Source of the DNA: Perkinsus chesapeaki ATCC PRA-425
Lineage: Eukaryota; Protista; Perkinsozoa
DNA: 64,000 nucleotides
Assembly: GCA_013115145.1 (NCBI GenBank)
Contig: JAAPAO010000066.1
Location: 1-64,000, forward strand
Reading direction: 5' to 3'
Each line of letters opens with the position of its first letter. Positions within the stretch are counted from its first letter, which is position 1. Position numbers and translations under genes: made by a program. The notes below the pieces were generated by a model that was not told the origin of the DNA, ran no database searches, and was given only the letters and a program-made list of their open reading frames with translations. Positions 9,284 through 55,692 of the stretch are shown here, one piece after another.

Positions 9284-9982
9284 TGTGGATAAGTAAACCA
9301 GGCTGATTGGAAGCTACTCTACCATGCACGGTATGAATATTATAGAGATGCCCCTACCCGGAATTGAACTCACGCCCTTTTCACTCCAGTAAGCATCAAA
9401 TTCTATTATAGCTAAGCGCCCGAGGCCATCTGCCCATATTCCATCCTAGCAAACAGAAATTTCCCTCCCAAGAATTCCTTCGGGCCGCCCTCTTGGTCCG
9501 AACTGAGCAACCAATGCCTCTGCACTTTTCTCGGCCATACCTGTCATTCCCGCTGCCTTCGCCTCTTTCCCAAAAACACAGACGAGAGACAATCGATTAG
9601 CTTGGCGTACGCAGCATCAGAGATTACCGTCACACAATGCCTGTCCCCTTCGCAAATGGTTATTGCCGGAAAATGAGAAAATTAAAAATGCTCTCACCGG
9701 GTATCGAACCTGCGCCACTTACATGAATCAGCCTCCTATGTTAAATGTATATGGCCATCTCAGGTTGCTAAATAGCTTCAGTGTTGACACCAACTGCATT
9801 CGATATCCTCCGTCAAGGACGACTGGAAACGCGCTAGGGCGAGGAGCAACCAATGACTCGATTGTAGAATGCCCAACAACGCAATACTGGTATAGCAAGA
9901 AACGTGCTCGGGAACGACTATGCCATTTACACATGTATAAATTGAGGAGAAAACTGCACATGTCGCGCTTCGCTCCGCCTGT

Positions 9983-13811: not shown

Positions 13812-14285
13812 TTCTACCTTTCCCTTTACTAGCCCGGCCAACACTCCTCGTAAACAATACCGCTGAAGACTTTAAACGCATCGGCAGCTCGCTCCGGTGA
13901 AATGAAAAAACCAAACTGCCACCAAGTGAGCCAAATCTAACACTGAGCTTTCTGATCCACTGATTTCGGTGTCTTATGAAAAGATACACTTTCCTCCCAA
14001 AGAGTCTTCGAACTCCTCCGCGCAATAAGTTATTGCGAACAACTCCATTGAAATTTCATTCTTTCGAAAATTTCCTGCTACTCATTATTTTACTATTAGC
14101 ATATCCGCATTCGACTCTCGCTTCCACTTCCAGTTTGTCGGTGAAACTCGAGTGTCAAGAAGCTCCCCTGTAAAATGCATATAAATACAAAATATTCCAA
14201 TACACTCCCCCTCTTCGACTACGTCAGCCCCTCCATTAGTCCCACTCGAACACAAACGATTTGCCATTAATGAACGTTCGCTGCA

Positions 14286-17200
14286 TCATCCATCTTCAGC
14301 AAATGCTACATTCGAAACTGCCCTCTTCACGCCATCCCAGGCGGCGGAGCGTTCAGATTGCCCATCATTCCCGGAGGCGGCGCGTGAAGACTTCCCGTTC
14401 CTCCGCCATACTTCCTAGAGCTTTCCGCAGCCGCAATTTCAGACTCCACACGAACTTGGTCCTTTGGGATGAAGAGACGCTGAACAGAAAAACTCATTCA
14501 CCAAGGTTCGAACCCACGCCCTCCCGAATAGCGAACATGAACCTTACCTTATTCACCTTTGCTTCCAGTTGAACATACACCTTCGTATCAGTGACATCGA
14601 TAACATTAGCCACCTGCCCCTTATATATACCTAATACCACACATAGATTCAATGCTGGAAAAACCTGTCTTAAATTTCAGCTAAATTTTGAAGATTCGTT
14701 CCACATAATCTTCTCAATTAAAGCTCTCAATTGTCCTTCTCATTACATCACTTACCACCCAATCACCAAATACAAAATATCTACCAAATTGGTAGTACCA
14801 ATCCCTAACCACTATCAATTCTCCAAAAATATATAATTATTTCTACTCTCTTTTCTTCCACTACGCTCTCCAACTATTTATATTGCCTATTACGTATATG
14901 ATAACTATTACTTCACAATTGATATAATCATCATACTTATTAAACTTAAGGCCCAACACAGCCAATCCCGTCGCCCCACCGCCTACCTTTAATAATACGT
15001 ATCCTTTTCCCCACCAATCTCGAGTCCCCCTTTCCTCCTCCTTTCCCTCCTCCGCTATGATAGCTCCCTTTACCTCCACTTCCCTTGTCATGATGCCCTC
15101 CACCACCACCCCACGAAGACCCCCCGCCAGAATTCCATCCCCAGCTCTTATTGCCCCCGCCACTGCCCCACTGGGAGCCCCAGCTGCTTCCAGATGACTG
15201 ATTGTGCTGCTGCGTATCACCACCACCACCTCCAACTTCTGGGGCGAAATCGTCTGCTCGAACCCCGCCTCGACCTAAGATATTATTATATTCTGCAGTT
15301 GTTCAATTTCAAAAAGCACGAGTAACTTTTGGTGGGAAGTGAGCGAGAAGTGGTGAGAAGTGAGCGAAATACTCAGAAAAAATAATAACACTGCCCGATA
15401 AAGAAGATTAAAAGAATTCAAAATATATACATTACACCGTTTCAAGCGTTTCTCAGGTTGTATATCTTGGAAGCTTAAGATTTGTCCAGGCCTTCTCTGC
15501 ACCCCCCCAGAAGACCGCAGGGTAACAGCAAAAAGAATCTATTTAATAGTAATATATATTCTGACATATCTATCTCCGCATCAACTTGGGGATAGATGGC
15601 ATCCTTAAACGCCTAAAGTAACGACTCTCATAATTGGTCATGTACTATTATTAAACATTATCTTCATCAAACTATACATTATAAAATGCCATACCATCCA
15701 ATGAGGAAAGTTAAAGCCGTCCTCCGGAATTCCACCATCCTTACCTTTGCCTTTTCCTCCTTTCCCTTTACCACCAAAAGTACGATTCGCCACTAGCTCC
15801 ACTTGATGCCCAGTGATAGCGACAATCCCCCCATCTTCAAGACGGTCATTAACCTATGCCATAATCGATCAACTGGGCGCGCGCTAATCGATCAATTACT
15901 TTCACCCAAGCAACGTTGTTCATAATGTGCTTCACTTGAGCACCTTTCCCTGCTAGGGGATGAGGAGGTAGGATTTTTAATAACGCCCTAAATGCCGTAA
16001 CCAGGAATTGAACCCACGACCTCCTGCATGACAGCCCTGTCTCACCCTGGTTTGAAAGGATTGTTGTTAACATCCATAAGAAAGACAACGTTGGTGTCGC
16101 GATGTCTACCCAGACTTCCCACAGGTACATTGCGAGCCCTGTTATCATTTCCTATTATTTTCGCGGTAGTCCCTGAGATAACGACAAACATTACCCATAC
16201 CCCAAATCAGGGTAAACGGTAAATATTATAGGTCGCCAATGTCTTAATATACAGCCCTCCCCAATGAAATAGAATATTTCGTTTTTTAACTATTTCTCGT
16301 CTGCTACTGTGTGTACGACCTTAAAATCTTGTAGCATAGTACTAGAACACACAGCAAGGAAGAATATACGTATAAGTGCTCGCCTACTCATGTTGGTCGC
16401 GAAAATTTCGAGACATCCCCTCTCATTATCGACAAGTGTACTAGAGAAAGCGGATTGGTGAGGAGTGATTGACGAAATCACGTGACTAAGATAAAAACCA
16501 ATCATCATTTTGGAGTGAAATATCCCATCTGTTCATAGGATTTGGTGATGGATGGTTGCAGCGCTCATTCACTGCTAGTATTCAATAATTACCCATCATA
16601 CTATATACTACCGATACCCTATAAATTTGCTCGAGTACAATACTAGAGACGGTGGGCACTATAGATGGGCAGCAGCAATGTTCACAACCTCCCTCAAGTC
16701 TCCGTCGCTTGTGCCGCCGGCAGCAAGTGCCATTGAAGTCAATAATCAGTCACTTTACGTTCACAAGTGACTGCTCCTACGTATTGATACCATCCACGCT
16801 CTCCCTCCCCCTTACCGCTCGCTGCAATACTAACAATAACTCCTACACCAGATGAGCCACTAACGTTAAGTGTTACCAAATCACCAACTTTATATTGACC
16901 AATCCTGAGCGAGTGTGAATAACTTGATCCTTATCAAACCATATCAATGTTATCATGATTCTAAAATTTACAATTTTGTTATTCTATCAGAGCAATAAAA
17001 TTCCTTTCTGTTATTACTCATCTCTTCATGTGCCAGATTTCCCCATCAAAGCATATATACGCTTTCTCATCTCACCGCAATCTCCATCCTCATATATGCG
17101 CTTTAATAGCAAGTCTTCCAAAATCTTTCTACGCCCTAGCCTTCGCCCTTCAATACTCCCCCTTTACTTTTCAATGCCTTTCGACACCTCCGCTGTCAAC

Positions 17201-20200
17201 TTCAAATTAGAACTTTGACATTTGACTTCTCGCGGCTCATTATCAGTCAATACAGTAGCAACCGATCCACTCACTTTAATAACCGTACCAGTGTCACCAG
17301 CTGAAGCACCTGAGGTTGAGAATATTACCGAATTAAGAGGGATAGAAATATATTCAAAAACTCGTTAACATGAAGTGAAAGATTCAAAATTATGTTAGTT
17401 GCCTATCAAACTGGTACATACAGTAAATTACTGTATGTATCAGTTTGATAGGCAACTAAGTTAGTTGAACTAACATTACTGTCAGTAATAATACCGAATA
17501 ATGAAACCTCCACGTTACCGCCCCTTTCTTATTACCATCCAATATCTTAACATGATCACCCATATCGAAATGCTTGCTGAGATCCTTTATAGCCACAGTT
17601 ACGTGACCTTTACCATGACCGACTTCAATGCTAACACGCTTCCTATCGGTGTCGATGGTCACCTAATGAGAATTGATTTTGGAAGTAATGAACGCGGCAT
17701 CTAAAGTGTAGACTGATAATGTTAGATAAAGCGAATTTGAACGAATTAGAAAAGACGGAAAAACGTTGATGTGATTCAGTATCGAAATGCGCAAAACTAG
17801 GAAGGGAAAAAAGGCGTAAACTAAACGGAAAAAATTGAAGGGAAGCAATAAGAAGGCCCAAAAAGGGAAAGTAAAAGACGTAAAAAATCCTCAAAACAGC
17901 ACTAAAAAGTCGTAAGTAGAAAACCTAGAGCGGCAATACGTTAATAAAGAAGAGGCGTTGTGGGGCGGCGCGACAAATATGTCTTATCTCTTCCGCTCCG
18001 ATCGTTGCCCTTTTTATTACCACTTTCCCTCGAAGATTCTTCATATCGCCACCAGTGACTACTACAGCATCACCAACAGACAGCGCGGCAGCTGCCCGAC
18101 TGCCCGAGGCTTCAGACTAAACACACTAAATAATACCGTATTTCCTACAAATCAGGTCTGCCGGGTAACCTATTGAGAGTTGTTGTGAAGATAATGTTGA
18201 TAAATCATTGCTATGACGCCCACTTGCTGACAATAGCCATATTTATAGGTTCTATTACACTGGGCTTTAATCGGCTCGACTAGTTAGAAACGTTTGATCA
18301 ATTGGCTCAACATAATTCTATGTTAACTAAGGTACCTTTATGACGGACCACAAAAGTGAAAAGAGAGAACAATCTCATCAGCTTCATATCACTTCTATCG
18401 AACATGATCCGCTTCCCCGCTGTCCTTCAGTTCCGAGATTCGAGTTCCCGTACGGAGATTATCAAGCCAGTTCCCGAACGAGCAGCTAGAATGTCGCATT
18501 ATTATTCATACTCATTTTTTCGACGCTTTTCAATCATATATTACAAAATTTACTTTACCTAATTTCCTATACTTATAATAGGCAATACCACTCCTAGTGT
18601 GCTTCAGATAATACTTATACTTGCCTTATTATACTTATACTAGTATTAATACAAGTACACTATTCATATACTTGCCATGCACATACAACTGCGACAGCTA
18701 TTTTCCCAACTATATATAATAACAATACGTCCCCAATAACATAATCACATTCAATCATCCGAAATAAAAGCCTTCAAATATCAACTACGCTTCATGCAGA
18801 TTCGCAATATTATTTCCTGCCGGCTTTTCACAGAACCTCCTTTCCCAGGTAACTTACCATAGAAGCCGCCGCAGCAGCTAGTAATGCTTGCCCCTCCCCG
18901 CCTAAATACAATTACGATTTGACAGAAATACGGTATGATTAAAATCACTCACCAGCCGCAGCGCTCCCCAAGAACTCTGAGATCTCCGTAATACTCGGCT
19001 GTACATCATCTCCCGTAATCAACGCATTCCGCTTAAACCGTCGATAAAGGTAGCCGTCCTTATTACAGATATTTATACCAAATTTCCCACAACTCATCCC
19101 ACCTTATATCTCTCATTTCTGTACTGGTCGAACACCTCATTAGGGTTTGTGGCCGTCCTATATCGGACACGCTCAACAGTTCCCTGACCTGAGCGAAAAC
19201 AGTTTCGGAAAAAATCTGGAAATTTCCACATCAGCGATTTTCCCGCACAAAAGATGCGACTAAGCGGGAAAATCCCACAGAAAATTTACTCGATTTCCCC
19301 GTCAATATGACATCTAATAGATTCCTAACTACTTCATCGTATTCCTCTTTATGAAGTAAAAAGCCATTCTTCTTCCTATTTTCAAGTGAGTTTCAATATT
19401 CTCTATTAAACAGTGTTTTAAATACTCAATATTTCAAGCCACGACGCATCTTCCACACTATCACCAGAGACTGCTCACCCGGATTCTTTCGAGTGCGCAT
19501 TCTCCTTGGTATCCCAAAGATTCCCATATAACTTCCACACAATTCCTGTCCCCTTTTACTACCCCCTCGATTCTCAGCTTCGATCGGGTCAAAAAAGCTC
19601 GCATGCGGTCGAGGCTTCTTTCCCGTTCTCCTTCCAAACAAAGCTGAATGCGTCTCTCTATCATACCATAAGAGTCACGCGCCATAAAATTATTTCCCCT
19701 TTACCTCGAATCCTCATCATAATTGATCCTTGGACGTATCTTAACTTCAACATCCATATCGAAGCACTCCACAACTTGGGCCAGATCATTCTGAAAAATA
19801 TTATCGTTCATCAGATACTTGAGAGAAAACATACAAAATGTATAACGACAAAAAATATGATTATATATACAGTAATAATGTAGCTATAAGTATGATTATA
19901 TATATCAATATGGTGTATACAGTCGGTATCAATAAAATTAAAATGAATATAATTAGAACCAAAAATAGCATATTCAGGAAGATGCAATTGGCCCTCCTGA
20001 GCCCTCCCCTCCCTATTACACTATAAGTTGGATGCCTCTTTATCCTCACCCACTCCCCCATTTTAAGTGGCACAAACCGTCCCTTAGCCGCCTCCTGCGC
20101 CGATCGGAACACTCCTAGCATCTCACTTGCTGGTACAACTTTCACCGAGTTACTGAAAATAACAAAAATAACTAAACCCGAGAAATATCGGCAAAAATGA

Positions 20201-25522: not shown

Positions 25523-25595
25523 GCCCGTCTAGCTCAGTCGGTAGAGCGCAAGGCTCTTAACCTTGTGGTCGTGGGTTCGAGCCCCACGGTGGGTG
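25523..25595 (+). tRNA. tRNA-Lys(CTT)
   Basis: GCCCGTCTAGCTCAGTCGGTAGAGCGCAAGGCTCTTAACCTTGTGGTCGTGGGTTCGAGCCCCACGGTGGGTG folds as a 73-nt cloverleaf with anticodon CTT and a G1-U72 wobble, followed by TTTT. Confidence 0.97.
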
Positions 25596-40490: not shown

Positions 40491-40807
40491 CTCACTAGTA
40501 AGGATAGGCTTATCTCTCACTAGTAAGGATAGGCTTATCTCTCACTAGTAAGGATAGGCTTATCTCTCACTAGTAAGGATAGGCTTATCTCTCACTAGTA
40601 AGGATAGGCTTATCTCTCACTAGTAAGGATAGGCTANNNNNNNNNNNNNNNNNNNNNNNNNNNNNNNNNNNNNNNNNNNNNNNNNNNNNNNNNNNNNNNN
40701 NNNNNNNNNNNNNNNNNNNNNNNNNNNNNNNNNCGCTTATCTCTCACTAGTAAGGATAGGCTTATCTCTCACTAGTAAGGATAGGCTTATCTCTCACTAG
40801 TAAGGAT
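40491..40807. repeat. 25-bp tandem minisatellite (CTCACTAGTAAGGATAGGCTTATCT) spanning an assembly gap
   Basis: Identical head-to-tail copies on both sides of the N run, with no spacers. Confidence 0.95.
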
Positions 40808-41949: not shown

Positions 41950-44900
41950 GTCAATGTTCATGTTGTTGTGCCTGGTAGGTACCAGAGGACCTTCCGTCCA
42001 TATCGTTCCGACATACCTTCGTTTTGATAGGGCGTGCCACTGTGTACTGCGAATTCGTTAAAATGGTGTGTAAAAGCAAAGCAGCGCGTTTCGCAATGTG
42101 CCAAAAAAGCCAGTATTCTATACGAGCCAATAATTCCGCCTGTGGTTCGAGTCGGTCGGACGTAAGCCAGGTGTCGTCCAGTAGCAGTCTTAATTTGGCC
42201 GCGCGACGTAGCGCAGCTAAACGTCAGCAGCCTGTCAGACGGACGAGTGATTCGTCGTTCAAGTAGGCAAAGGTTTGTGAGAGTGTTGAGGGTTGCTTCG
42301 ACAGAATATCCACCCATGAAGGCGTATAGTTAATGTATAACGCGATACTTGTAATATCTATGGCAAACTGATGCAATGCTGAGCTTCATGTTTAGCAGTT
42401 CTAGAGTCGATTTAAGAACATTTGCAATCGTGATGAGATCATCGTGGAACTTTAGATGATTTCAAATTATTGCTTGACAGACTCTCGTTAAACTAAACAT
42501 GTGGTACTCCTCATTTTGAGTTTCGCGAATCCTGGCAGTTTCAAGCTTCAAGAATCTTTCCGTTTCAGATGCTACTGCCAGATAGAAACTGCCAATATCC
42601 AGCGCTCGGCTTCCCGTGGTGGTTCTCAGCTATTATCAATCCAGCGATCAGCATCTAACCTATCCCCTGAAGCTCGCTGTACGGCCTCTAACCATTCGAC
42701 GCCTGTTTGCCGTTCGATATCGAATTCAATTTCCAGACAGCGTTTGACCGGCAATGTCCTTATCAGCCGAGTTTGCTTCGAAAATGTAGGACAACTGCTA
42801 CAAATTATTATTGTATGTCTTCCTCTGCCAGGTATCCTACAAATACTCATCCTACATCCCCCGGCTCAGCTGCTCCAATGCGGTGCTCAATACAGCATTC
42901 CTCTTCCTTCTACCGTTGGACCCGCCCTCCAGTAAAGAAACCGTCGTGGCAGGTTCTTGCGCTAACTGTTTTAATATGTTCACTATCACCGATTCGTCCC
43001 GACAGACGCGTTCCGATCTCCTGGTAAGTTGACCTCGCTCGCCCCCTTCAGCTTCTTCTGCTGTTTTGATCCCTTCGCGCCACGTGCTTCCGAAATCGCT
43101 TTGTTCCTTTTCATTTAAGAATACCCTCATGCTTTCAGAAGGAAGATATCAACATGCTCGATCTCCGGTTGCGGCAATGCCAAAGGATGATCCAGAGTTG
43201 GGGTAAACGTTACGGTGAACCCTTGGTGACGCTGGTTGTTCTGTCTGATGACTACTCTGGTCGTAAGCCCTCTTATGGTCGACAAGAAGCTCGAGCAGCA
43301 GTCGAGGGTTTATGGAAGAAGTGGGGCCCTAGCGGTGAAGGCGTCCTTAGCGAGAGGTTCGACTATGAGTGGGATGGCGACCGATTGCACACTCTGGTCA
43401 CCAACTTGTCCGAGATGCTCACGCAAAACTGGCGGACTAATAGTGTCAAGTCCCATTAGTGTCGCCTTCGTCACCTACTAGCTTGAGACTAGTCAAGGTG
43501 TTTGGATAGCTGTCAATTCTGTTGTTCAACCTGCACCATTGGTTTGACCATTCTTATGGCGTTTCCGCCAAGTGACGTGTGTAGGCGTTTTAGTCATTAA
43601 CTGTAACACAACATGATTGTCTCCTCGTTAGAGCTCATGCCTTCGCCGTGCGCTATGATCACATTTAATAAAAGCCCTTCGTCGTTCAGCATCGACTTCT
43701 CCCGGTTCCAGAGGGCGATCGGCGTAGATGTCCTGGTAGCAGATGGGGGAGATACACCTGTCAATGGCGAGGAGAAAGGGAATGTTTTGTGTGAATGTTA
43801 AAGCACCTGTCAATGCAAGCCTCCATGTGATCGTTGTTGTTGAGGTTACGACACTCTGGTGAGCGAGAGCAGCGAGAGCGTCGTTGTGTCCAACTTCGGG
43901 ATAGAACGCAGCATGGTGTGATGAGGAGGAATATTAAGAGGTGTTGGAATAATACGAACATTAGGACAACTGAGTGACAGAGGGAGGAGGAGACTTGTTG
44001 CAATCAATAATCTGATAAATGGATGGAATGAAAAGGTCATCTTTTATGGGATAATGAACGATGAATATTTGAATCTGATTAAGATGGTTTGAAGTTACAT
44101 CCGACGGTGACTGTTCCCACGTAGATGGTTTAATTGACAACGAAAGAGAGCAAGGGTCAACCAATAGAAATGGCAAAGTGCAAAAAAGTCAGAGGTTGAC
44201 GGTAGTGTGACGAATAAGACAATTGGAAGTGCATTGCCGCATCAAGAAGCCTCGAGCTCCTCCGAAGTCATAGCTCTGCTCTCGATTATTGGTGTGAGCG
44301 TCCCATTAGTAAACGGTGATGAGGCTTTGTTGCTGCCTGGGTGGCGTTTCTTCGCCTTGGGAGTTGGCTTGGAAGTGCCACCGTAAATCCTGAGAGTACC
44401 AGAATGCAGAAGGTATTGCTCATCGAAGATTCTCACCATTCAAGCTTATCCAGTCCATGGTTTAAACCGGTCCGACGTTCTTGACGGCGGAGTCCGCAAA
44501 AAGATAACAACTTCAACCATCGTTCGTTGAACGATTCACCGTGTCCAACTTTCCGGTCAGAGATTTTCCGCTCTGAAGAATGAATCGAGTTGTGAGCATT
44601 AGTACCCGAAGACGACTCACCGCCTTGCTGGAGGCATCCCATACAAGGGTGGATACAACGGGAGGGAAAACAATAATAGCCGGATGGCAGTACGTCACGT
44701 TCTTGCTCTCTTACCAATCTTGCTTTTCCTCAACTATGTGGACGCGTGCAACTTTCTGTCACCTTTGGTCCTTTGCCGACTGCTGGAGGGTACATGTCAC
44801 ATACTTCTCGCTGCGTGGTATATAATAACGAATCGATATATCAACAATGTTGTTATATACACACTCGACTTCTCCATTAACTCACAAGCTTGGGAAATCA

Positions 44901-45345: not shown

Positions 45346-46310
45346 ATGAGTTCTCGTGTTGTAGTGAAGTTTCACTTCAAGTCGGAAATACTCCGAATAA
45401 GAGCTGTTGCAGAGGACTTTGATTCGATCGACAAGGTCCGAGAATACGTGGCTGACTGCTGGCCGGAGCTTCGTGGTAAAGACTTTGAGATTCAGTACAA
45501 GGACTACGGTGATGTTAAGAGAGTTCTCAACGAGCATTCGATAGATCATGCTTTTGATGTCGCCCACGATAAGGTCCGAAAAGTCACTCAGATCCCCTGT
45601 GTTGATTTCTTCGTAACGGAGAAGGTCAATGTTGCTGATAACAAGCAGGGTGAGGCTAAGATACCAGAAGAAAAGAAGCAACAAGAAGCTGCTAAGGAGG
45701 GTACCTGCCCTGCTATGAGCAAGTGCCCTTATATGGCTGCTAAGGAAGGTACCTGTCCTGCTATGAGCAAGTGCCCTTATATGGCTGCTAAAGAGGGTAC
45801 CTGTCCTGCTATGAGCAAGTGCCCTTATATGGCTGCTAAGGAGGGTACCTGTCCTGCTACGAGCAAGTGCCCTTGTATGGCTGTAAAGGAGGGTACCTGT
45901 CCTGCTATGAGCAAGTGCCCTTATATGGCTGCTAAGGAAGGTACCTGTCCTGCTATGAGCAAGTGCCCTTCNNNNNNNNNNNNNNNNNNNNNNNNNNNNN
46001 NNNNNNNNNNNNNNNNNNNNNNNNNNNNNNNNNNNNNNNNNNNNNNNNNNNNNNNNNNNNNNNNNNNNCCTGTCCTGCTATGAGCAAGTGCCCTTATATG
46101 GCTGCTAAGGAAGGTACCTGTCCTGCTATGAGCAAGTGCCCTTATATGGCTGCTAAGGAAGGTACCTGTCCTGCTATGAGCAAGTGCCCTTATATGGCTG
46201 CTAAGGAAGGTACCTGTCCTGCTATGATGTGTCACTATGCAATGGTCTGTCCACAGAACTACTGTTGTTGTTGTCCTTGCCCATATTGCTGTCATTACTG
46301 CAGTTGTTAA
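45346..46310 (+). CDS. PB1-domain protein A with tandem 16-aa Cys-Pro repeats and a poly-Cys tail (spans an assembly gap)
   Basis: N-terminal VVVKFHFKSEILRIR...CWPELRGKDFEIQY, then (AAKEGTCPAMSKCPYM)n with at least 9 units visible (48-bp repeat), ending CPQNYCCCCPCPYCCHYCSC*. The frame change across the gap is attributable to the arbitrary N length. Confidence 0.85.
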
Positions 46311-47238
46311 GCTACTCAATTCCCTCCAAATCAGTAGTTACTCGCGTATTCGCTTTCCGTTAATCTTCATTTGTTTGAAACTCTAAAAGACCCGTTTATT
46401 TCACATTTCGTACGTCGTTGAGTTGCCTAGTTGAGGCGAGATGATTTTTAAAATGGTGGATGGTTGGGGAGATGGAAAAAATGAAATTTGAAAATGTGCG
46501 AAATTATTGTTTCTCCATCTTTTATATTTATTGAGGTATTAATAGAATATATGATGATGTACATTTCTTTCTCGAAAGATGTCCTGGTTTTTACCAGGAC
46601 ATATAGCAGTAAATTTGATATCGATCAAGGAGCTTCTCGCAAGGAGGCCAATTAGAGAATCAAAACAACGTTTGGATAGTTCCTGTTTGTGACGAGCGCA
46701 TGAAAAGTGAAGTAGACAGCATTTGTGTTGCGCATAATACATGTGCCTCACATCGCGCTGAAGAGCGCCCACTACCGAGACTGCTACGGGAATGAGCGTT
46801 GCTACCAGCAGAAACTTGGTAGATTGTGATTTGAGCTCAAAAGCTTTGAAAGATCCCCCTAGTCACTTTCTCACTGCACAATTAAGACTTTCATCATCAT
46901 TATCTTTCACTTGGTGTAATATGGCGCATATCTTTCTACATCTTCTTGTTGCACAGCATCACCTGCCCAACACAATACTTTATAACTTATTGTGAAGTGC
47001 GCTTACCCTACATGTGGTAGATAGTTGCCTAAGAACATAATTTCCTACCCGTCCTTTGTGTGAGAGGATCTTTCTCAGCTTTGTGTGAATCTGTCTCTGT
47101 GTCCGTCGGAATTTCTCAACAGACGCTAAACATTACTACTTGGTGTAATGGGCCATTTCCTCTTTGTGAACTTGTTTGCCATGTTGTCATGGGTTGCTCT
47201 TCATCAGTTGTATAAGTTATTCTTTCTTCTAAGTTGTC

Positions 47239-48459
47239 ATGTGTGATCAAGTCGTTCTAAAGTTCCATTTCAATTCGGATATCGTCCGCGTGCGTGCCAG
47301 TCCCAGCGACTGCGACTCTGTAGCGAAACTGCACGAGTATGCAGCTGACGCCTGGCCAGAGCTCAGAGGCAAACACTTCGATATCGTCTTCTGTGACGGT
47401 CTAGGTGCGAAGGACATCTTGGATGAGGAGAAGCTCGGTAAATTGTTATCAGAGGCATCTGGCTCTGATAGCACTTCGAGAAACATCGGCCTATTCGTGG
47501 AGGAGCGCGCTGATGATGATGAGGCAGCAGCAGCAGCAACTGCTGATGAGAAACCCGGTACTACTGCTGATAACGATGGTGCATGTCAGTGCCCAATGAA
47601 GGGTCCTTGTCCATGTATATGTATGTGCCATCATATGATGGGTTGCTGTCCTGCTATGGCCAAGTGCCCCTATATGGCAGGCAAGTGTGGTGATGCTTGC
47701 AAGTGCACTGNNNNNNNNNNNNNNNNNNNNNNNNNNNNNNNNNNNNNNNNNNNNNNNNNNNNNNNNNNNNNNNNNNNNNNNNNNNNNNNNNNNNNNNNNN
47801 NNNCTCTGGCAGGCAAGTGTGGTGATGCTTGCAAGTGCCCTGCTATGATGGGTTGCTGTCCTGCTATGGCCAAGTGCCCCTATATGGCAGTCAAGTGTGG
47901 TGATGCTTGCAAGTGCCCTGCTATGATGGGTTGCTGTCCTGCTATGGCCAAGTGCCCCTATATGGCAGGCAAGTGTGGTGATGCTTGCAAGTGCGGTGAT
48001 GCCTGCAAGTGCGGTGATGCCTGCAAGTGCGGTGATGCCTGCAAGTGCGGTGATGCTTGCAAGTGCGGTGATGCCTGCAAGTGCGGTGATGCCTGTAACA
48101 AGGCATCTTCAAGCTTATCGGGCTTGCCGGTAATGAGATGCCATGGCATGTTGGTCTGCCCTGTTATGAGACACCACGGTTCAGTTTGCTGCCCCATGCG
48201 CAAGTGTTGCAACCCTGCTGCTGTCGAGAAGCCCGCCTCTGAAGGTTCCCAGACCCCAGACGCTTCTCAGGAGTCTTGCTGCCAGAAGGAGCGTTCTTCT
48301 TGCCCTTGCTGCTGCTTCTGCCCAGCTGCTGCCATGGAATGCCCCTACATACACCGTGCGTGCATGTGCCCTATTATCCGATGCCACCTAATGATGATGA
48401 TGGCCAATTGCCCTGCCCACTGTTGCGCTCCTGTTGCTGAGACCGCAAAAGAAGACTAG
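47239..48459 (+). CDS. PB1-domain protein B fused to a metallothionein-like Cys-rich region
   Basis: VVLKFHFNSDIVRVR...AWPELRGKHFDIVF, 26-aa repeats MMGCCPAMAKCPYMAGKCGDACKCPA, then 7 tandem KCGDAC units and a Cys/Met-rich tail. Single ORF through the gap. Confidence 0.85.
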   Translation: MCDQVVLKFHFNSDIVRVRASPSDCDSVAKLHEYAADAWPELRGKHFDIVFCDGLGAKDILDEEKLGKLLSEASGSDSTSRNIGLFVEERADDDEAAAAATADEKPGTTADNDGACQCPMKGPCPCICMCHHMMGCCPAMAKCPYMAGKCGDACKCTXXXXXXXXXXXXXXXXXXXXXXXXXXXXXXXXLAGKCGDACKCPAMMGCCPAMAKCPYMAVKCGDACKCPAMMGCCPAMAKCPYMAGKCGDACKCGDACKCGDACKCGDACKCGDACKCGDACKCGDACNKASSSLSGLPVMRCHGMLVCPVMRHHGSVCCPMRKCCNPAAVEKPASEGSQTPDASQESCCQKERSSCPCCCFCPAAAMECPYIHRACMCPIIRCHLMMMMANCPAHCCAPVAETAKED

Positions 48460-49351
48460 GCAAATGGTATTCATACTTTTCTCTGAAGAGTGTTATTAAA
48501 GACAATTAATCGTCGAGATGATCTCCGCGTTCATTATGAACGAAATACCACTTTTAAGGTAACGATATATTACCCTTACTTTGCCTAAAGTTGTTGCTGT
48601 TTACGCATAGCTTTTTCCAATCTCAATTAATGTTGTGTTCTTTCCAAATTGAATGTTTTCTACTATTCGTATTTACAGCCTTAGATCGAACATTCCCAAA
48701 TACTATCTTTCCCTCTGCGGTTGGACTGTTATTATTCGGTCACTAGGTTTCTAGGGGTGACGTGGGCCACTATGGCCATTTAACGAGTAGTTCGAGTTCT
48801 GCAGCTATGTGTTTTACCAAGATAGTTCTATCTGTTGGTATGCACTGAGTCCGCATATATTAACAGCGTCGCTGTAACAGCGATCCTGATTATGTTACTT
48901 CCTAATAGCACAATAACAGCTATCATGTGCTGTAGTGGCGTCGTAGATACTGTTGGCTTATATAATGTATTATTAAGTCACCGGCTTTAGGAGTTGAAGG
49001 AGTTATATTCTTCCTGCTTGCAACAGCAGCACAACGCTATTCGTGGGTGGCTCTACTTTGCCGTGTGTGTGGGAGTTTATAGTCTAACGCCGAATAGGGT
49101 TTAGTTGGACTATCCATTCTGTGTCGTGTCGTTATGATGCCAGAGCTACGTAGTAGAGGTTGTACCATTTTTACACAATGTGGGACATGTTGTCCCCCTA
49201 AGCTAGTGAGCATCTTGTGGTAGGCATCGCGGAAAGGTATCTTTAGGTCAAGCGTGCATGATACAAAAAAAGTCAGAGTAGAGCCACCACATGAGCGCCC
49301 ATCAAGATCATCGTTTTTGGCAGTTATTATTAATATACCTGATTATAAACT

Positions 49352-51424
49352 ATGAGTGACCAAATAGTTCTGAAGCTTCATTTCAATTCGGAGATCGTCC
49401 GAGTAAGAGTCGCATCTTCTGAATGCTCCTCCTACTCTCAAGTGTGTTCTTACATAACCAGCACTTGGCCCCAACTGGCTAGCAGCGACTTCGCCGTCTA
49501 CTACGTTGATGATGAGAATGATAAGTGCCTGTTGAACGATCGTTCCCTTGCTGATGCCGCTGAAGTGTCTAAGGAGATCGCCGCCAATAACAACAAGAAG
49601 ACTCCAAGCATCGACTTGTACGTCGAAATCGCCGCCAGAAAGGCCGAGGAGAAGGAAGAGCCCAAGCCCGAGCCCAAGCAGCCTGCCGATTTCTTCGGTA
49701 ACGTTGCCAGCTGTGACGTCTGTGGTCAGTACCCTATCTTTGGAATGAGGTACAAGTGCCAGACTTGCCCTGACTACGACATGTGTGAGACTTGCTACGA
49801 TAATCGTACTTCTGAGACTCACGATCCCTCACATAAGTTCACTCAGCTGCCCGGTGTCCAAGTCCCGCCGATGTTCCCTTGGTTCATGATGAATGGTGGC
49901 TGCCCGGTTGCCGGCAAGGGCAAGGGCAAGGGCAAGGGCAAAGGCAAGGGCTACTGTGGCGACCGTGCTGCCGACGGTAGCTTTCCCTTCAACGCAATGT
50001 TCTTTGGCGGCAAGGGCAAGGGAAAGGGCAAAGGAAAGGGATGCTGCAGTGAAGATTGGTTGAAGAACCTCTGGGCCCAAGGGAAGGCCGCTGCTGACCA
50101 GTTCGCTATGGCTGCTGGGATTCATCCTGGAGTGACCTGTGATGGGTGTGGTGTCAGCCCCATTGTCGGGCTGAGGTGAGTTTGCTTCCCATCACTCTCG
50201 CTTAACATTGCGCATGTTCAGGTACAAGTGTCTCACCTGCCCTAACTACGACCTTTGTTCCAAGTGCTACAACAACGACAAGATCGTTCATGATCACCCT
50301 AGAGAGGACTTCTGGGGGATGACTCCCGAAGATACCATTGACCTGAAGAATGGTGATGAGCCGCCTAAGTCCCCATCTGCTGCTGCTGCTGACCAGCAAG
50401 AGCGGGAGAAGACCCCTGAGAAGAAGCAGCCTGAGCAGCAGGAGGCCTCTGAGAAGAAGCAGCCCGAGCAGCAGGAGGCCTCTGAGAAGAAGCAGCCTGA
50501 TCAGCAGGAGGCCTCTGAGAAGAAGCAGCCTGATCAGCAGGAGGCCTCTGAGAAGAAGCAGCCTGAGCAGCAGGATGCCTCTGAGAAGAAGCAGCCTACT
50601 GAGGAGGATAAAGGTAGGGTTAGACAATTTTGTTGCTGTTGTATTGCCTGTCCTTCTTCGCCCCAGATACTGCGTCTGATGCTGGAAGCTGGACTCATGT
50701 CGATTCTCAAGCAACTCAACAACAACAACAACAACCTTCATGCGCCCAACTTGATGCGCAGCAAGATGCCTTAGAGAAAGAGGACGCCGTCAAGAGCTCA
50801 GCCAAGGATACGGAGGCAGTCTCTGACTCCAAGACTGACAACAAGTCCGCCGAGGTTCCGGAGACTACCCCTACGCAGACCCCCGGAAATGCAGCTGTCC
50901 CTGCCGAGTCTGCGGATGGCGCTGCTCAAGAGGCTGGCGAGCCGAAGGCAGCCGAGCCACGCTCTCGCGGCGGTGTAGAGGAGCCTCAGATCTCTGAAGC
51001 CCCAGCAGCGGCGCAAGAACAGAGCCAGCCTGCTGCTGATGGACAACAACAGGTGGGTTGTGTGGCGCTGCATTTCGGTAGCGTATTTTCGTGTCTTTTT
51101 TAGGGAAGCGGGGAGTCCACCGTGGAGACTATCATGAACTTGATGACGAATCTCGGATTGGTTCAAAACAGGGACGCTGCGGGGCAGTTCGTCCGTGATG
51201 TGGTGAGTCACTTGAACTGGCGGGTTTTGTTTCATTGTGGATTTCAGATGAGCACAAGCCAAGACATCACCAGTATGGTCGACCACTTCCGTACCCACGC
51301 CGAGGCCGTCCAAAACCAAATGAGACAAGCCCAGGAGCAAATGAGGCAGGCACAGGAGCAACTTCACCAAGCTCAACAACAGCAACAACAGCAGCAGCCG
51401 CAGCCGCAGCAGCAGCAACCCTAA
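49352..51424 (+). CDS. p62/SQSTM1-NBR1-like selective autophagy receptor: PB1-ZZ-ZZ-LIR-UBA-like, multi-exon
   Basis: PB1 with basic K (LKLHF) and OPCA (YVDDEND). ZZ1 CDVCGQYPIFGMRYKCQTCPDYDMCETCY...HDPSH. ZZ2 HPGVTCDGCGVSPIVGLR|YKCLTCPNYDLCSKCY. 11-aa EKKQPEQQEAS repeats. SDAGSWTHVDS (W-x-x-V). C-terminal LMTNLGL helical segment and polyQ. Confidence 0.85.
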
Positions 51425-51634
51425 GGAGTGAACCCGAAGAGTTTGAGCAATTATGATGATGCTTTGAAATACTCCTAACAAAGACGTTGAGATCTTTTTA
51501 AGTCATCCAGAAACCCTTTCCTTTTGTTATGGTCACCGTCGAGTGAATTCTGTTAGAAACAGGGGAATACCAGATAGCTGTTGCGTTATCGAGTACACAA
51601 AGATTGTCTCCTCCGAAGAGTGTTGACTCTGCAA

Positions 51635-52114
51635 ATGCCAGTCTTCATCAAGCTCAAGTTCGACTCAGAGGTAGCCAGGTGGCGTATTTTCTATGTGCCA
51701 GCTCTCGCGGACGTCCGCCGATGCCTCTACGAAAAGTGGCCGCATCTGAGAGAGGACGCCAATGTTAAGTTATTCTACACCGACGAGGACGGTGATAAAT
51801 GTCTGTTAAACGAGGACTCCCTGTTCGATGCGTGGGAGCTGGCTAAGCACCGCGTAGAGCACCAGGATGCTAGATCGCCGACTCTGAACCTGCTCGTCGA
51901 GCGTGGTACCTCTGCTATACCTCCAGCCGTTCACAGCCTATCTGGTTTGAATCTCAAGGGCTGTCTCTATGTGATACTGCCCATGTCTTATTATAACAAG
52001 TTGCTCGGCGACTCTATTATCAAAAATGATGTTGACGGAGGTAACCAGCTTCTGCCATCGCCATTCATGATAGTGTGTGCTGTATTGATTAATAATATGA
52101 TCATTCCGAGGTGA
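51635..52114 (+). CDS. PB1-only protein D
   Basis: MPVFIKLKFDSEVARWR...KWPHLRE...FYTDEDGDKCLLNEDSL has both the conserved Lys and a canonical OPCA motif. Confidence 0.75.
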   Translation: MPVFIKLKFDSEVARWRIFYVPALADVRRCLYEKWPHLREDANVKLFYTDEDGDKCLLNEDSLFDAWELAKHRVEHQDARSPTLNLLVERGTSAIPPAVHSLSGLNLKGCLYVILPMSYYNKLLGDSIIKNDVDGGNQLLPSPFMIVCAVLINNMIIPR

Positions 52115-52587
52115 CCCCCTAAGGGAAACTGTAGCGAGGATTAGCGAGAAGGATAATGATAATAGAAATAAGTTGTACATTGTATGCATCTAAAAGTCAT
52201 AGTAGATATTGATAACATCTAAATGAGATATATTATAAATGATCCCTTGCTGCTATACTATATGCTATGTGACAACGGGTGGTATCTTACCGTTACCTTA
52301 ATGAGGAGCCTGAGCAATGCAAAAGACCACTAAATTGATCCGGGAATTACGAAATTTGATCCATGGGATATTGTGGGCATTCACGTACATCGGAATCATC
52401 ACTGCTCAAAATTGCGACCATGACTGTTGCCACGTTCACTGGATACCTGCGAGGATGGGATAGCGGCTATCCGATAGCCAAGTGCTGCTTATTCTGTACA
52501 AACTCCTTATGGGTTTCTGTGAGATAATGTCGTTGAAGGAGGCGTAGCCTTGTAGGTGTTGTTGTAATAACGGGTTATTGATCGTCG

Positions 52588-52659
52588 GGGCGTGTGGCTC
52601 AACGGTAGAGCATCTGACTCCAGATCCGACGGCTGTCCGTTCGAATCGGGCCAAGCTCA
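52588..52659 (+). tRNA. tRNA-Trp(CCA) with two stem mismatches (functional or pseudo)
   Basis: 72-nt cloverleaf: GCTC/GAGC D-stem, loop CTCCAGA, T-loop TTCGAAT, A discriminator, TTTT terminator. G5.A68 mismatch in the acceptor stem and a U.C mismatch in the anticodon stem. Confidence 0.85.
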
Positions 52660-53327
52660 TTTTAGGCAGTAGGTCTGGTATAAACCCGGTCTTTTCAGAT
52701 ATCGCAGTCCTCGACTCTGCGTCCGATTCTGGCCACACCAGCTGCAGCAGCAGTGGAAGCTGGTTGAATGTTCCCGCTGAATCATTCTGACACCCCTAGC
52801 CATCCTCGTTGAACCTAAACGGGTTAGTCAATGGCCGTTCTTTGTTGTTATCTTCTGCGGTTCTCTTCGTGTACGTATGCTTTGTTCGCTGCGTTTAGAT
52901 ATCGGTTTGTCCGCTTTTCGTTATGCCGCCTGCAACCCACGCCCTTCTGAATGTTAATCCCCTACCGTAACTATTCGACTACATTACAATTTATTTCATC
53001 TGTGTGAGCATACCAACAGGTTTTTATCTCACCTGGCTCATCCACAGTTTGCCTCAAAAGATGCAATGTTTCGTTCATCTGCAAGTGAGGAAGAGTACAC
53101 TCGTTCTTCTCGCCATCCTCAGCAATTGGCCGTGGTCCTGTTTTTTCTATCTTCGACCCACAAGAAAACGTGCCCGGCTCTAGCAGCCAGACCTTTCCAA
53201 AGTTCCTGCAATCCTCCCGTCGCTGCCATAAATGGTCGCAATATCGTACTTGGGCCCTAGGATGCCTTTTCCGTGATGAGGGAAATCTTTAGCATTTTGT
53301 TGTGTCGAAAACTGTCCCCCGGTATCC

Positions 53328-53750
53328 ATGCCATTTGAACACATATTGCTGAAGCTCTATTTCAAGCAAGAGTGCATGAGGACGCGGCGCTCCTTCCAGA
53401 AGGACTGTACTTCGCAAGGTGCCGGAGTGTTGGGGAAAATAAAATCGTTAGCCGTTCTGGCCTGGCCGGAGCTGACCGAGAAGTCACTGAGATTTTACTA
53501 TTGCGATGATGAGAATGACGATTGCGTGCTGCTCCCCGAGACCTGGGATGATGCGGTCTTAACTGCAGCAGCCGTCGGAGATAACAAAGGCGAGGACTCC
53601 GAACACCCGGTTGTCATTAGGGTCACCGTCGTCGTAGAAGATGATATTGTTGTTGCTGATGGATACGGCCAAGTGGCTGCCAAGACCGACACAGCGCGTG
53701 AGAGCGGTGGCGGGATTAATCGACGGCCTCGATTCGACGGTTCCCTGTAG
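53328..53750 (+). CDS. PB1-only protein E
   Basis: ILLKLYFKQECMRTR...AWPELTEKSLRFYYCDDENDDCVLL has the conserved Lys, the WP.L motif and an OPCA motif. Confidence 0.75.
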   Translation: MPFEHILLKLYFKQECMRTRRSFQKDCTSQGAGVLGKIKSLAVLAWPELTEKSLRFYYCDDENDDCVLLPETWDDAVLTAAAVGDNKGEDSEHPVVIRVTVVVEDDIVVADGYGQVAAKTDTARESGGGINRRPRFDGSL

Positions 53751-55692
53751 TGGAGGGTTGGATAGAACAGCTTGGAATGAAGACATGCGCTAATTTCCGT
53801 ATCTTTTGATGGAACCGATTTCCCTTAGACTTTTTTTTATTTTTCCGGAAACTCGGTGAAATTCCGGCAGATCTTAGCGTCCCTAATTATAACAGTGTGT
53901 GCGAGTTTATGGTCCAACACCAAAAATGGCTTAGTTGCACTATGTCTTACTGCTGCTGGCCGAGTTCATTACTTATATTGCTCCGTCACTGTATGGTTCA
54001 CCCAGAAAAATGTAACTGGTGTTGAGAGATTCTACTATAGTGCCCATCTCCTATAGCGACTCGAGGCGGCGAGGAGAGCTCTGCTGAGGGAGTCACACGA
54101 GCGATGATATCATTAATAGATATTAAAACAGACACTCAATTCATCACAGACAGGCATTACGATAAGGCGGTGACCGGATCTATAAACCTGTTGGGGGTAC
54201 AAACCCTTCACTTCGGAAGATTTTAGTCGTCAAACTTCGCAGAATTTTGGTGAAAAAATTCGCGGAAGATAGCATACAAAGTATCGCGTAGATCTGTACA
54301 AATGATGACACTATCGGTTGTGACATAGATTCCACAAAAACAAGTAAACATCTCAGTTAAGGAGGCGCGTCAGGAAATTTAGAAAGTTTTCTCATTTTGC
54401 TCAGTTATCAACAGTCATCAGCCCAGTAAGGTCGCCAAGCGACCTCGTCGAGTATCTTCTGTTCTGCCTACAAGGATCACTTCAACGCCGTTCGCTCGGC
54501 CCAAGCAAGGCTCCTCGCCTTCTGCGTCTTTCACCGCCGCCACGAATGGGGTTGCTCCGTTTGCAGGTAATTGGGAATGCACTCAACCTTGGAACTGCTA
54601 CGGAAGGTTTGGACGCCTTGATCGGAACAGCTAGCGCATCTTCCAGAAGAATTAAAACAGATCGTCTCGTCGAGTCTATTGTTGACGTCTATGTGTTCTG
54701 GAAGGGGTCTCGGGAATGCAGGTGTTAGCGAGACTTCATTCGGATAAATTTTTACATCGTTTGCAGTGCAAACGGCTTCTTTCCACTTCACGCGCTACAA
54801 CTCTGCGGACTTCAATGAAAATTCTATAGCCCAGGGCTTCTCCGTCGACAGGTTCGACCGTGCCCCTTCCAGCACCGCCTTCAATGAAGACAACCGAAAA
54901 TAACAGGGAGATTGACCTGGAAGCCGCCGACAACCAAAGTATTAAAGTTTACTTTTCGGGGTCATTGATTTCGGTAGGTAAATCTACAACGGAAGAGAAT
55001 GAAGTGCAGATGGAAATCGACAAGACAGTCGAGGATAAAGTTTAAACTGAGTTCCTCATGTTGTTATTTTCTGACACCTCTAGCTGTTTAGTGGGGTTAT
55101 TCTGTGAAGGCTGGAATCTATCTAGCCTCAGTGAGATGAATTCCTCGGTGGTATAGTATACCTAGGTATAGTAAAATAGTCCTAGTGCGGATAGTCTAGA
55201 TAGTATGGATAGTCTGACTAAGCCAATTTCGGCGTTGGACTATAAACTCACACACACACGAATAAACTCAAATATGTTCCGAGAGCAAAGAGGGCATTAT
55301 GGGCTTCCCCTCTAGGGCCTCTTTATGCTGCCCCTCTGTAACTCCTCGGCTGGGAGCTCGGTTCACACAAGCGAACAGCTGCGAGTTGCGACCATGATTC
55401 TTAACATCGTACTTACTCCCTGTGAGTTCTCATGGAGTAGTTATCTTGTCTAGGACAGGTTCTCTTTGACATCAGTTTGGGCGTCAAAGCTGTGCCCTAA
55501 ATCGACATCCTCGAATTTTTCAACTTTCCACCACTGAGTGGTTCGCATTATATCTTTTATTCAAATTCAACGATGAAAAAGTGCCTACTTTCTCTGAATC
55601 ATTCAAGTCCGTTTTCTCGCTTCAAATTTGCTGCTAAAAAACGTCCAGTCATCTTCAGATCAAGTCTTCAATTCGGCAGCGTTCCATTTCAC

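What the first reader, a model, noticed from the sequence alone, without database searches (positions are those of the whole stretch)
45346..53750. Five-gene PB1 array: a candidate co-polymerising autophagy and metal-sequestration system
Seen: five consecutive + strand genes start with a related PB1 domain (shared K.[HYK]F...R..R and WP.L motifs) but carry different C-terminal cargo. A has Cys-Pro repeats, B has metallothionein-like repeats, C has ZZ-ZZ-LIR-UBA-like, and D and E have essentially nothing else. Established: PB1 domains polymerise head-to-tail through Lys/OPCA contacts, and p62/NBR1 filaments deliver cargo to ATG8. Inference: a local duplication of a p62-like PB1 produced interchangeable subunits of one filament, so Cys-rich metal or heme sponges could be recruited by the LIR-bearing member into condensates or autophagosomes. 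I do not recall such a PB1-plus-metallothionein cluster being described.
Basis: partly seen in the sequence, partly recalled or inferred. Interest (0 to 1): 0.88.

Follow-up and report, generated by a model that had tools for sequence, protein, structure and literature searches.

The report
Perkinsus PB1 gene cluster with cysteine-rich members
A clam parasite (Perkinsus chesapeaki) carries five neighbouring genes that share one protein-docking domain (PB1) but have different tails: two very rich in cysteine and methionine, one resembling the autophagy receptor p62, one with only an ATG8-binding-like motif. This combination has not been described, and its function has not been tested.

Summary
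The core observation is real. The window is Perkinsus chesapeaki. It holds exactly five PB1-family domains, all on the + strand within 8.4 kb.

- **A and B:** PB1 fused to tandem repeats with 17-22% Cys and 9-13% Met.
- **C:** PB1-ZZ-ZZ, a conserved SWTHV motif, and a three-helix module that no test here identified as UBA.
- **D:** not bare. A spliced RNA contig joins 52040 to 52699 and adds a conserved C-terminal SWLNV motif. The 658-nt intron holds a tRNA-Trp.
- **E:** has at least one further exon, starting at 54405.

Both assembly gaps lie inside in-frame tandem repeats. P. olseni has the same architecture in one uninterrupted ORF.

The cluster is syntenic in P. olseni and P. marinus. The PB1 of B is under purifying selection (pN 0.10, pS 0.67). 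All five keep the basic Lys/Arg face. A and B have a degenerate acidic OPCA face, so they would dock or cap rather than act as interchangeable filament subunits.

The five are not shown to be one clade; the family has at least eight Perkinsus subfamilies.

D and E are transcribed and carry a spliced leader. No RNA was found for A or B. Metal binding, co-assembly and autophagic delivery remain inference. No homologue or paper describes such a fusion.

The parts
45346..46310 (+). Gene A. PB1 (45346-45624), linker, at least 9 units of the 48-bp/16-aa repeat AAKEGTCPAMSKCPYM (45688-46227, broken by the assembly gap 45972-46068), and a poly-Cys C-terminus (46228-46310).
   Evidence: ORFs; repeat; sequence and gap phase; PB1 profile hit 9e-30; tail 17% Cys, 10% Met.
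47239..48459 (+). Gene B. PB1 (47239-47508), acidic linker, Cys/Met/His-rich region with 78-bp units (gap 47711-47803 inside them), an 18-bp KCGDAC run (47969-48095), and a Cys/Met-rich C-terminus.
   Evidence: ORF; repeats; AF2 and Foldseek give a PB1 fold; tail 22% Cys, 9% Met; gap phase; pN/pS 0.10/0.67 against P. olseni.
49352..51424 (+). Gene C, about 625 aa. Exons 49352-50175, 50222-50613, 50667-51052, 51104-51202, 51248-51424. Contains PB1 (49352-49633), ZZ1 (about 49700-49825), (GK)n, ZZ2 (spans intron 1), five 33-bp repeat units, the LIR-like core WTHV (50690-50701), and a three-helix module (51104 to about 51330).
   Evidence: Pfam PB1 and two ZZ; GT..AG model gives an open frame collinear with P. 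marinus P0002; motif conserved in three species. Introns are modelled here, not read-supported.
51617..52790 (+). Gene D, about 165 aa. Spliced-leader acceptor AG at 51617-51618, exon 1 51635-52040 (PB1 51635-51904), intron 52041-52698, exon 2 52699-52790 with the LIR-like core WLNV (52761-52772).
   Evidence: Contigs of X1 and X4 at 100% identity, preceded by the spliced-leader sequence; X6 contig joins 52040 to 52699; translation; orthologues end SSGWQEV / SSWQEV.
52588..52659 (+). tRNA-Trp (CCA) gene inside the intron of gene D.
   Evidence: ARAGORN; intron borders from the spliced contig.
53291..54566 (+). Gene E. Spliced-leader acceptor AG at 53291-53292, exon 1 53328-53697 (PB1 53328-53657), intron 53698-54404, exon 2 from 54405. 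Its 3' end and any later exons are unresolved.
   Evidence: X1 contig at 100% identity with the spliced leader at its 5' end; its loose 3' end maps to 54405. The annotated model P0001 uses a different 3' exon.

Best explanation
This is an old, conserved gene cluster of a Perkinsus-specific PB1 family. One oligomerisation handle has been joined to different functional tails.

- C is a p62-like selective-autophagy receptor candidate: PB1, two ZZ fingers, a p62-style SWTHV LIR-like motif and a family-specific three-helix module.
- D is a minimal PB1-plus-LIR-like adaptor.
- E is a PB1 protein with an uncharacterised tail.
- A and B are cytosolic proteins. Their long tandem-repeat tails (about 20% Cys, about 10% Met, some His, core motif KCPYM) most likely act as high-capacity ligand arrays for soft metals (Cu(I), Zn, Cd), in the manner of tandem-repeat metallothioneins.

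A and B keep the invariant Lys/Arg face but have a degenerate OPCA face. I infer that they cannot polymerise head-to-tail by themselves. Instead they would dock with their basic face onto the acidic face of an OPCA-bearing PB1 partner. The neighbours C, D and E are the most obvious candidates. That would place the metal-loaded tails in PB1 assemblies that C and D can link to ATG8.

Shown here: the genes, the PB1 fold, the motifs, synteny, purifying selection, and transcription and splicing of D and E.

Inferred only: metal binding, hetero-oligomerisation, ATG8 binding and autophagic delivery.
For: - Five PB1 paralogues lie in a row; B's domain has a PB1 fold.
- Only 52 proteins among 1.84 billion representatives match the family profile. 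Every top-28 hit whose source was looked up (20 of them) is from Perkinsus.
- Synteny: P. olseni has upstream gene, B-like, C, D, E, GDI. P. marinus has upstream gene, AB-like, D, E, GDI. The same upstream gene lies in the window at 43154-43447.
- The PB1 plus Cys/Met-repeat fusion is present in all three species with a shared KCPYMAAKE core.
- B's PB1 has pN 0.10 against pS 0.67.
- The K/R/R basic triad is invariant. OPCA acidic positions are 2-3 of 6 in A and B against 5-6 in C, D and E, and B's degenerate form is conserved in P. olseni.
- W-x-x-V motifs after Ser/Asp/Gly-rich stretches are conserved in C and D of three species.
- D and E mRNAs carry a spliced leader, and D's second exon is transcript-supported.
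- Tails are 17-22% Cys and 9-13% Met, and PB1 starts at Met1, so no signal peptide is possible.
- From my own knowledge, not tested here: bivalve haemocytes, where Perkinsus lives, accumulate Cu and Zn; Cryptococcus uses large repeat metallothioneins against phagocyte copper.
Against: - No RNA run holding A or B was listed, and the laid runs show no reads on B's last 360 coding bases.
- No interaction was predicted or measured.
- The tails have no significant similarity to any metallothionein or other family. Pfam gives none, the Atlas score is 0.57, and a snail Cd-metallothionein scores only E 2.1.
- Each Cys in A's repeat is followed by Pro and a hydrophobic residue, which fits heme-regulatory motifs equally well.
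- The PB1 family has at least six further subfamilies elsewhere in the genome that could be the real partners.
- In P. marinus, C lies on another contig, so linkage of C to the rest is not obligatory.
- Tandem paralogues in eukaryotes usually reflect their duplication history, not joint function.
Confidence: 0.38

Rival explanations
1. The cluster only records its duplication history. The five proteins work separately. A and B are self-contained thiol-rich buffers, for metals or as sacrificial Cys/Met sinks for oxidants from the host haemocyte burst. Their PB1 binds some other partner, or none, and has no link to autophagy.
For: - The family has many members elsewhere with other tails (three-helix repeats, OB fold, LCPC).
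- The five are not resolved as one clade.
- C is unlinked from the rest in P. marinus.
- There are no co-expression data.
Against: - The order AB-like, (C), D, E is kept in three species although synonymous sites are saturated.
- A PB1 with a conserved basic face but a degenerate OPCA face, under purifying selection, implies an OPCA-bearing partner.
Confidence: 0.35
2. A and B are heme buffers. Their KCPYM / CPAM units are arrays of Cys-Pro heme-regulatory motifs that bind labile heme reversibly, not metal ions.
For: - There are 17 CPxM motifs in A, 9 in B, and 46 in the P. olseni orthologue.
- In A every repeat Cys is followed by Pro and a hydrophobic residue.
- From my own knowledge: the motif pattern Lys/Arg-Cys-Pro-hydrophobic is that of Hap1, ALAS and Bach1.
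Against: - B and the P. olseni and P. marinus orthologues add CC doublets, CxC runs (KCGDAC, CCCCCCC) and MM pairs. These are typical of metal-thiolate clusters, not of heme motifs.
- No heme-related gene was seen among the neighbours.
Confidence: 0.15
3. A and/or B are not functional genes: decaying copies, or repeat-driven assembly or annotation artefacts around the gaps.
For: - Both genes contain assembly gaps, and A's frame as written is shifted.
- No RNA evidence was found.
- Neither is found as a predicted protein by the word-index search.
Against: - Long open frames lie on both sides of each gap in the same repeat phase.
- The same architecture is read through without assembly gaps in two independently assembled species: one ORF in P. 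olseni, two overlapping ORFs in different frames in P. marinus.
- The PB1 is under strong purifying selection.
- The word-index search also failed to find the P. marinus protein with itself as query, although that protein is in the collection. Its blanks are therefore uninformative.
Confidence: 0.04

Closest known systems
p62/SQSTM1 (metazoan selective-autophagy receptor)
   Same: Gene C has an N-terminal PB1 with both the basic Lys/Arg face and the OPCA face, a ZZ finger, a LIR-like core W-T-H-V (p62 has W-T-H-L) after an acidic/Ser stretch, a small helical C-terminal module, and no FW domain.
   Different: C has two ZZ fingers separated by (GK)n. No TRAF6- or KEAP1-binding regions are recognisable. 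The C-terminal module is not detectably UBA. p62 is reported as confined to metazoans (PMC9582228), so this would be convergence or an independent loss of FW.
NBR1 (including plant AtNBR1)
   Same: PB1 plus ZZ plus LIR layout. AtNBR1 PB1 is the best structural match of the family's PB1. NBR1 homologues are reported in Alveolata (PMC9582228).
   Different: The FW (four-tryptophan) domain used to define NBR1 was not found by Pfam in C or in its P. marinus orthologue.
p62-NBR1 PB1 hetero-oligomer (a one-sided PB1 docking on a two-sided polymer)
   Same: A and B look one-sided and C, D and E two-sided. That is the logic by which NBR1's PB1 joins p62 assemblies (own knowledge; also PMC9582228).
   Different: The polarity is reversed: A and B keep the basic face, whereas NBR1 keeps the acidic face. 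No interaction was tested here.
Tandem-repeat metallothioneins (Tetrahymena, Cryptococcus Cmt1/2, mollusc metallothioneins)
   Same: About 20% Cys in CxC, CC and CxxxC patterns, built from rapidly homogenised tandem units. The KCGDAC run weakly resembles a snail Cd-metallothionein (6qk5).
   Different: There is no significant sequence similarity (E 2.1). The tails have 9-13% Met and one Tyr per unit. The proteins are at least 300-600 aa. They are fused to a PB1 domain, which I found described nowhere.

Membership tests
PB1 domain (Pfam PF00564) | Ubiquitin-like beta-grasp fold of about 80-90 residues | tested here: met
   The AF2 model of B's domain has the order beta-beta-alpha-beta-beta-alpha-beta (pLDDT 81.6). 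The top Foldseek hits are PB1 domains. The other four align to it at 24-41% identity.
PB1 domain (Pfam PF00564) | Score above Pfam's gathering threshold | tested here: inconclusive
   Met for C (27.8 bits) and D (31.7). Not met for A (13.7), B and E. All five score 85-121 bits against the family's own profile.
PB1 domain (Pfam PF00564) | Conserved Lys on strand 1 (type B face) and/or acidic OPCA motif (type A face) | tested here: met
   K8, R17 and R19 are present in all five. OPCA acidic positions: 5-6 of 6 in C, D and E, 2 in A, 3 in B.
p62/SQSTM1 | PB1-ZZ-LIR-UBA architecture without an FW domain | tested here: inconclusive
   PB1, ZZ (two copies) and a conserved W-x-x-V motif are present, and no FW is found. 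UBA is not detected by Pfam, a PDB profile, Foldseek or VIA-align.
p62/SQSTM1 | Orthology within the metazoan p62 clade | tested here: not met
   The PB1 belongs to a Perkinsus-restricted family. p62 is reported only in metazoans (PMC9582228).
NBR1 | FW (NBR1-like) domain together with PB1 or ZZ | tested here: not met
   No FW/N_BRCA1_IG hit in the exon products of C or in P0002 at E up to 0.01-1.
LIR/AIM-containing ATG8 binders | Core [W/F/Y]-x-x-[L/I/V] preceded by acidic or phosphorylatable residues | tested here: met
   C has DAGSWTHV and D has SSGSWLNV. Both are conserved in P. marinus and P. olseni.
LIR/AIM-containing ATG8 binders | Binding to ATG8 | not testable with these tools
   Needs a binding assay. 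The presence of ATG8 in Perkinsus was not checked here.
Metallothionein | High Cys content in CxC / CC / CxxC patterns | tested here: met
   Cys is 17% (A), 22% (B) and 20% (P. olseni). B has 17 CxC and 9 CC.
Metallothionein | Sequence membership of a described metallothionein family; small size; few aromatic residues | tested here: not met
   No Pfam hit. The best metallothionein in the PDB scores E 2.1. The proteins are at least 300 aa. There is one Tyr per repeat unit.
Metallothionein | Metal-thiolate cluster formation | not testable with these tools
   Needs recombinant protein and metal analysis.
Heme-regulatory (Cys-Pro) motif proteins | Cys-Pro followed by a hydrophobic residue, often after Lys/Arg | tested here: met
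   KCPYM and CPAM: 17 CPxM in A, 9 in B, 46 in the P. olseni orthologue. Heme binding itself is not testable here.

The most novel reading that the evidence does not exclude
Perkinsus has built a modular, PB1-based 'sequestosome'. Polyvalent thiol/thioether-rich subunits (A, B) capture Cu, Zn, Cd or heme from the metal-rich host haemocyte. They dock through a one-sided PB1 onto polymerising PB1 subunits with LIR-like motifs (C, D). The load is condensed and delivered to the vacuole by selective autophagy. This would be a route of metal detoxification by autophagy receptor filaments that has not been described in any organism.
Probability: 0.15. Interest if true: 0.85.

Novelty: new variant of a known kind. 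Interest (0 to 1): 0.6.

Why it matters
PB1 scaffolds, p62-like receptors and metallothionein-like proteins are each well known. A PB1 domain fused to a Cys/Met-rich repeat array has not been described, as far as the searches here reach. Nor has its conserved position beside a p62-like receptor and a minimal PB1-plus-LIR-like protein.

If the parts assemble, the locus would link metal or heme handling to selective autophagy in a parasite that lives inside metal-rich bivalve haemocytes. It would also show a p62-like layout arising outside animals.

The hypothesis is directly testable: one-sided against two-sided PB1 faces, and two conserved LIR-like motifs. Even without the functional link, the locus documents a Perkinsus-specific expansion of PB1 proteins with exchangeable tails. 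It also corrects the gene models of D and E.

Tried and rejected
- **Word-index homologue searches** with B and with the P. marinus AB-like protein returned nothing. The second did not even find itself, although the protein is in the collection. These blanks are uninformative, probably because of the low-complexity sequence.
- **Tail relatives.** An ESM Atlas search with B's tail gave a best score of 0.57, with no meaningful relatives. A PDB sequence search with B's tail gave only chance-level hits; a snail Cd-metallothionein scored E 2.1. I therefore rejected any claim of homology to mollusc metallothionein or of host gene transfer.
- **UBA.** A profile of 16 three-helix modules against the PDB, an AF2 model (pLDDT 85) searched with Foldseek and VIA-align wide, and Pfam on all 16 modules gave no UBA match. 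I keep only 'three-helix module with an LGF loop'.
- **3' exons of E.** Enumerating GT/AG pairs to finish the model gave many open combinations and no decision.
- **Monophyly of the five.** The AU test gave p 0.072, which neither supports nor rejects it.
- **RNA for A and B.** No run was listed.
- **Literature.** Searches for Perkinsus + metallothionein, PB1 domain + metallothionein, Perkinsus + PB1 domain, and the P. marinus locus tags found nothing relevant.
- **My first model of D's intron** (donor at 51906) was replaced by the transcript-supported donor at 52041.


Full report
**Organism and setting**

The predicted protein of gene E is identical over exon 1 to KAF4674301.1 of Perkinsus chesapeaki, from a 95-kb contig. 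The window is therefore from this alveolate parasite of clams. The region has short GT..AG introns and about 46% GC.

**Assembly gaps (checked first)**

- The gap in A (45972-46068) interrupts a 48-bp tandem repeat. The gap in B (47711-47803) interrupts a 78-bp tandem repeat.
- On both sides of each gap the same unit continues and translates to the same peptide.
- If only repeat units are missing, the missing length is 21+48n bases in A and 42+78n in B. Both are multiples of three, so the reading frame is kept.
- As written, the 97 N in A shift the frame, which is meaningless for an estimated length.
- P. olseni encodes the same architecture in one uninterrupted ORF of 603 aa. In P. marinus a 492-aa ORF carries all but the extreme C-terminus, which lies in an overlapping ORF in another frame (9144-9440).
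- The number of repeat units in A and B remains unknown.

**The observation**

- The five N-termini align at 29-39% identity with invariant K8, F11, R17, R19, W39-P40-x-L42 and D53.
- A family profile finds exactly these five domains in the 64 kb, all on the + strand.
- Pfam calls PB1 above threshold in C and D only.
- An AlphaFold model of B's domain (pLDDT 81.6) matches the PB1 domains of AtNBR1, human NBR1, PKCiota, Par6 and p62 first.
- The only PDB sequence hits of the family profile are six PB1 domains, all weak (E 0.06-0.5).

**Gene models**

- **C** has five exons and about 625 aa. The model is collinear with P. marinus PMAR011080 (P0002). Its order is PB1, ZZ, (GK)n, ZZ, five 11-aa repeats, DAGSWTHV, a low-complexity stretch, and a three-helix module.
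- **D and E in environmental libraries.** In two marine metatranscriptomes made by RT-PCR, contigs 100% identical to the window start at 51616 (D) and 53291 (E). Both are preceded by CCGTAGCCATTTTGGCTC(A). That is the dinoflagellate-type spliced leader; P. marinus uses a close variant (PMC9399869). The TTTT form may come from the library primer. Both junctions sit on AG dinucleotides 17-35 nt before the start codons. D and E are therefore transcribed and trans-spliced as separate mRNAs.
- **D's second exon.** A contig from a run labelled with the same species joins 52040 to 52699 with GT..AG ends. The spliced form shows that the run holds RNA. D is thus about 165 aa and ends ...SSSGSWLNVPAESF. 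This matches the P. marinus orthologues, which end ...SSGWQEV.... The 658-nt intron contains a tRNA-Trp gene.
- **E** is spliced from 53697 to 54405. That differs from the deposited model. Its 3' end could not be settled.
- **C** is covered only by short contigs, some of them divergent. B's last 360 coding bases had no coverage, and no RNA run holding A or B was listed.

**Family and evolution**

- Among 1.84 billion representative proteins, only 52 match the PB1 profile at E up to 0.001. Every top-28 hit whose source was looked up (20 of them) is from P. marinus, P. olseni or P. chesapeaki.
- They form subfamilies with different tails:
  - ZZ-ZZ-LIR-like (C);
  - LIR-like only (D);
  - E-type;
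  - Cys/Met repeats (A/B);
  - an OB fold;
  - a short LCPC-type Cys tail;
  - others.
- In the tree, A pairs with B and its P. olseni orthologue (93/94). E pairs with the LCPC group, which is encoded elsewhere (94/84). The backbone is unresolved.
- Forcing the five and their orthologues into one clade costs 9 log-likelihood units (AU p 0.072).
- The array is therefore not shown to be one exclusive local burst, and its members predate the divergence of the three species.

**Synteny**

- P. olseni: upstream gene, B-like, C, D, E, GDI.
- P. marinus: upstream gene, AB-like, D, E, GDI. C lies in two copies on another contig, each behind a copy of the upstream gene.
- The window has the same upstream gene at 43154-43447.
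- B's PB1 against P. olseni has pN 0.10 and pS 0.67. This is strong purifying selection at saturated synonymous sites.

**The tails of A and B**

- They are 17-22% Cys and 9-13% Met, with some His and no Trp.
- PB1 starts at Met1, so the proteins should be cytosolic.
- The unit differs between species, but the core KCPYMAAKE is shared. This points to concerted evolution under constraint on the motif.
- No Pfam, PDB or Atlas relative exists.
- 'Metallothionein-like' therefore describes composition and Cys spacing, not membership.
- The Cys-Pro-hydrophobic pattern fits heme-regulatory motifs as well. The CC, CxC and poly-Cys runs and the Met pairs favour soft-metal binding. I rate metal above heme, but neither was tested.

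**PB1 faces**

- The K8/R17/R19 triad is invariant in nearly the whole family.
- At six canonical OPCA positions, D has 6 acidic residues, C and E have 5, B has 3 and A has 2. B's degenerate form is the same in P. olseni.
- From established PB1 biology, two-sided domains can polymerise head-to-tail, while a basic-only domain binds an exposed acidic face and ends the chain.
- I infer that C, D and E can polymerise and that A and B dock or cap. They are not interchangeable subunits.
- A conserved one-sided PB1 implies a hetero-partner. Its identity is unknown. The neighbours are candidates, and so are the other subfamilies.

**Comparison with known systems**

- NBR1 is defined by the FW domain, and p62 is reported only in metazoans (PMC9582228).
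- C has no FW and no detectable UBA.
- C therefore works like p62 on paper but is a member of neither family.
- No paper in the held library links PB1 with metallothionein-like tails or describes these Perkinsus genes.

**Verdict**

- The array and its unusual architectures are real, conserved and undescribed.
- Interest is moderate to high because the hypothesis is new and directly testable.
- The earlier notes of this scan on the same stretch gave the leads for D's LIR-like exon and the intronic tRNA. Both were checked here.

Noticed in passing
window 52588-52659 (+): A tRNA-Trp(CCA) gene lies in sense orientation inside the 658-nt intron of gene D. The intron borders (52041-52698) are supported by a spliced RNA contig.
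   Followed up: partly
window 51616-51618 and 53291-53292: Contigs from marine metatranscriptomes made by RT-PCR are 100% identical to genes D and E. They carry a dinoflagellate-type spliced leader at AG acceptors just upstream of the start codons. P. chesapeaki-identical mRNAs therefore occur in environmental spliced-leader libraries. The short same-strand spacers (about 190 and 500 nt) would allow co-transcription of C, D and E.
   Followed up: partly
window 53697-54405 and 54979-55045: The deposited model of gene E (KAF4674301.1) joins exon 1 to a distant exon near 54979. The RNA contig instead splices 53697 to 54405. The true 3' part of E is unresolved.
   Followed up: partly
L002 (P. marinus GG676694) 7130-20186: In P. 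marinus the C gene is on a different contig from AB-like, D and E. It occurs twice (PMAR011080 and PMAR011078), each time behind a copy of the gene that precedes the cluster in the other species. This is a segmental duplication or an assembly of haplotypes.
   Followed up: no
P0007, P0009-P0015, P0018, P0019, P0021 (Perkinsus proteins): [quoted passage not shown] No Pfam or PDB match identifies the module. One source names a member a 'UBA domain-containing protein'.
   Followed up: partly
P0006, P0016, P0064 and P0017, P0020, P0022: Further family members fuse the PB1 to an OB-fold region (one is misnamed '60S acidic ribosomal protein P1') or to a short tail with LCPC..CC motifs. The latter group is the closest relative of E's PB1.
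   Followed up: no
window 49913-50040 and 50416-50597: Gene C holds a (Gly-Lys)n stretch between its two ZZ fingers and five 33-bp units encoding EKKQPEQQEAS. RNA contigs from the species-labelled runs match this gene at only 90-95% in places, which suggests a divergent allele or a second copy.
   Followed up: no
window 25523-25595 (+), 252-349 and 40637-40733: A tRNA-Lys(CTT) gene, and two further assembly gaps outside the finding.
   Followed up: no
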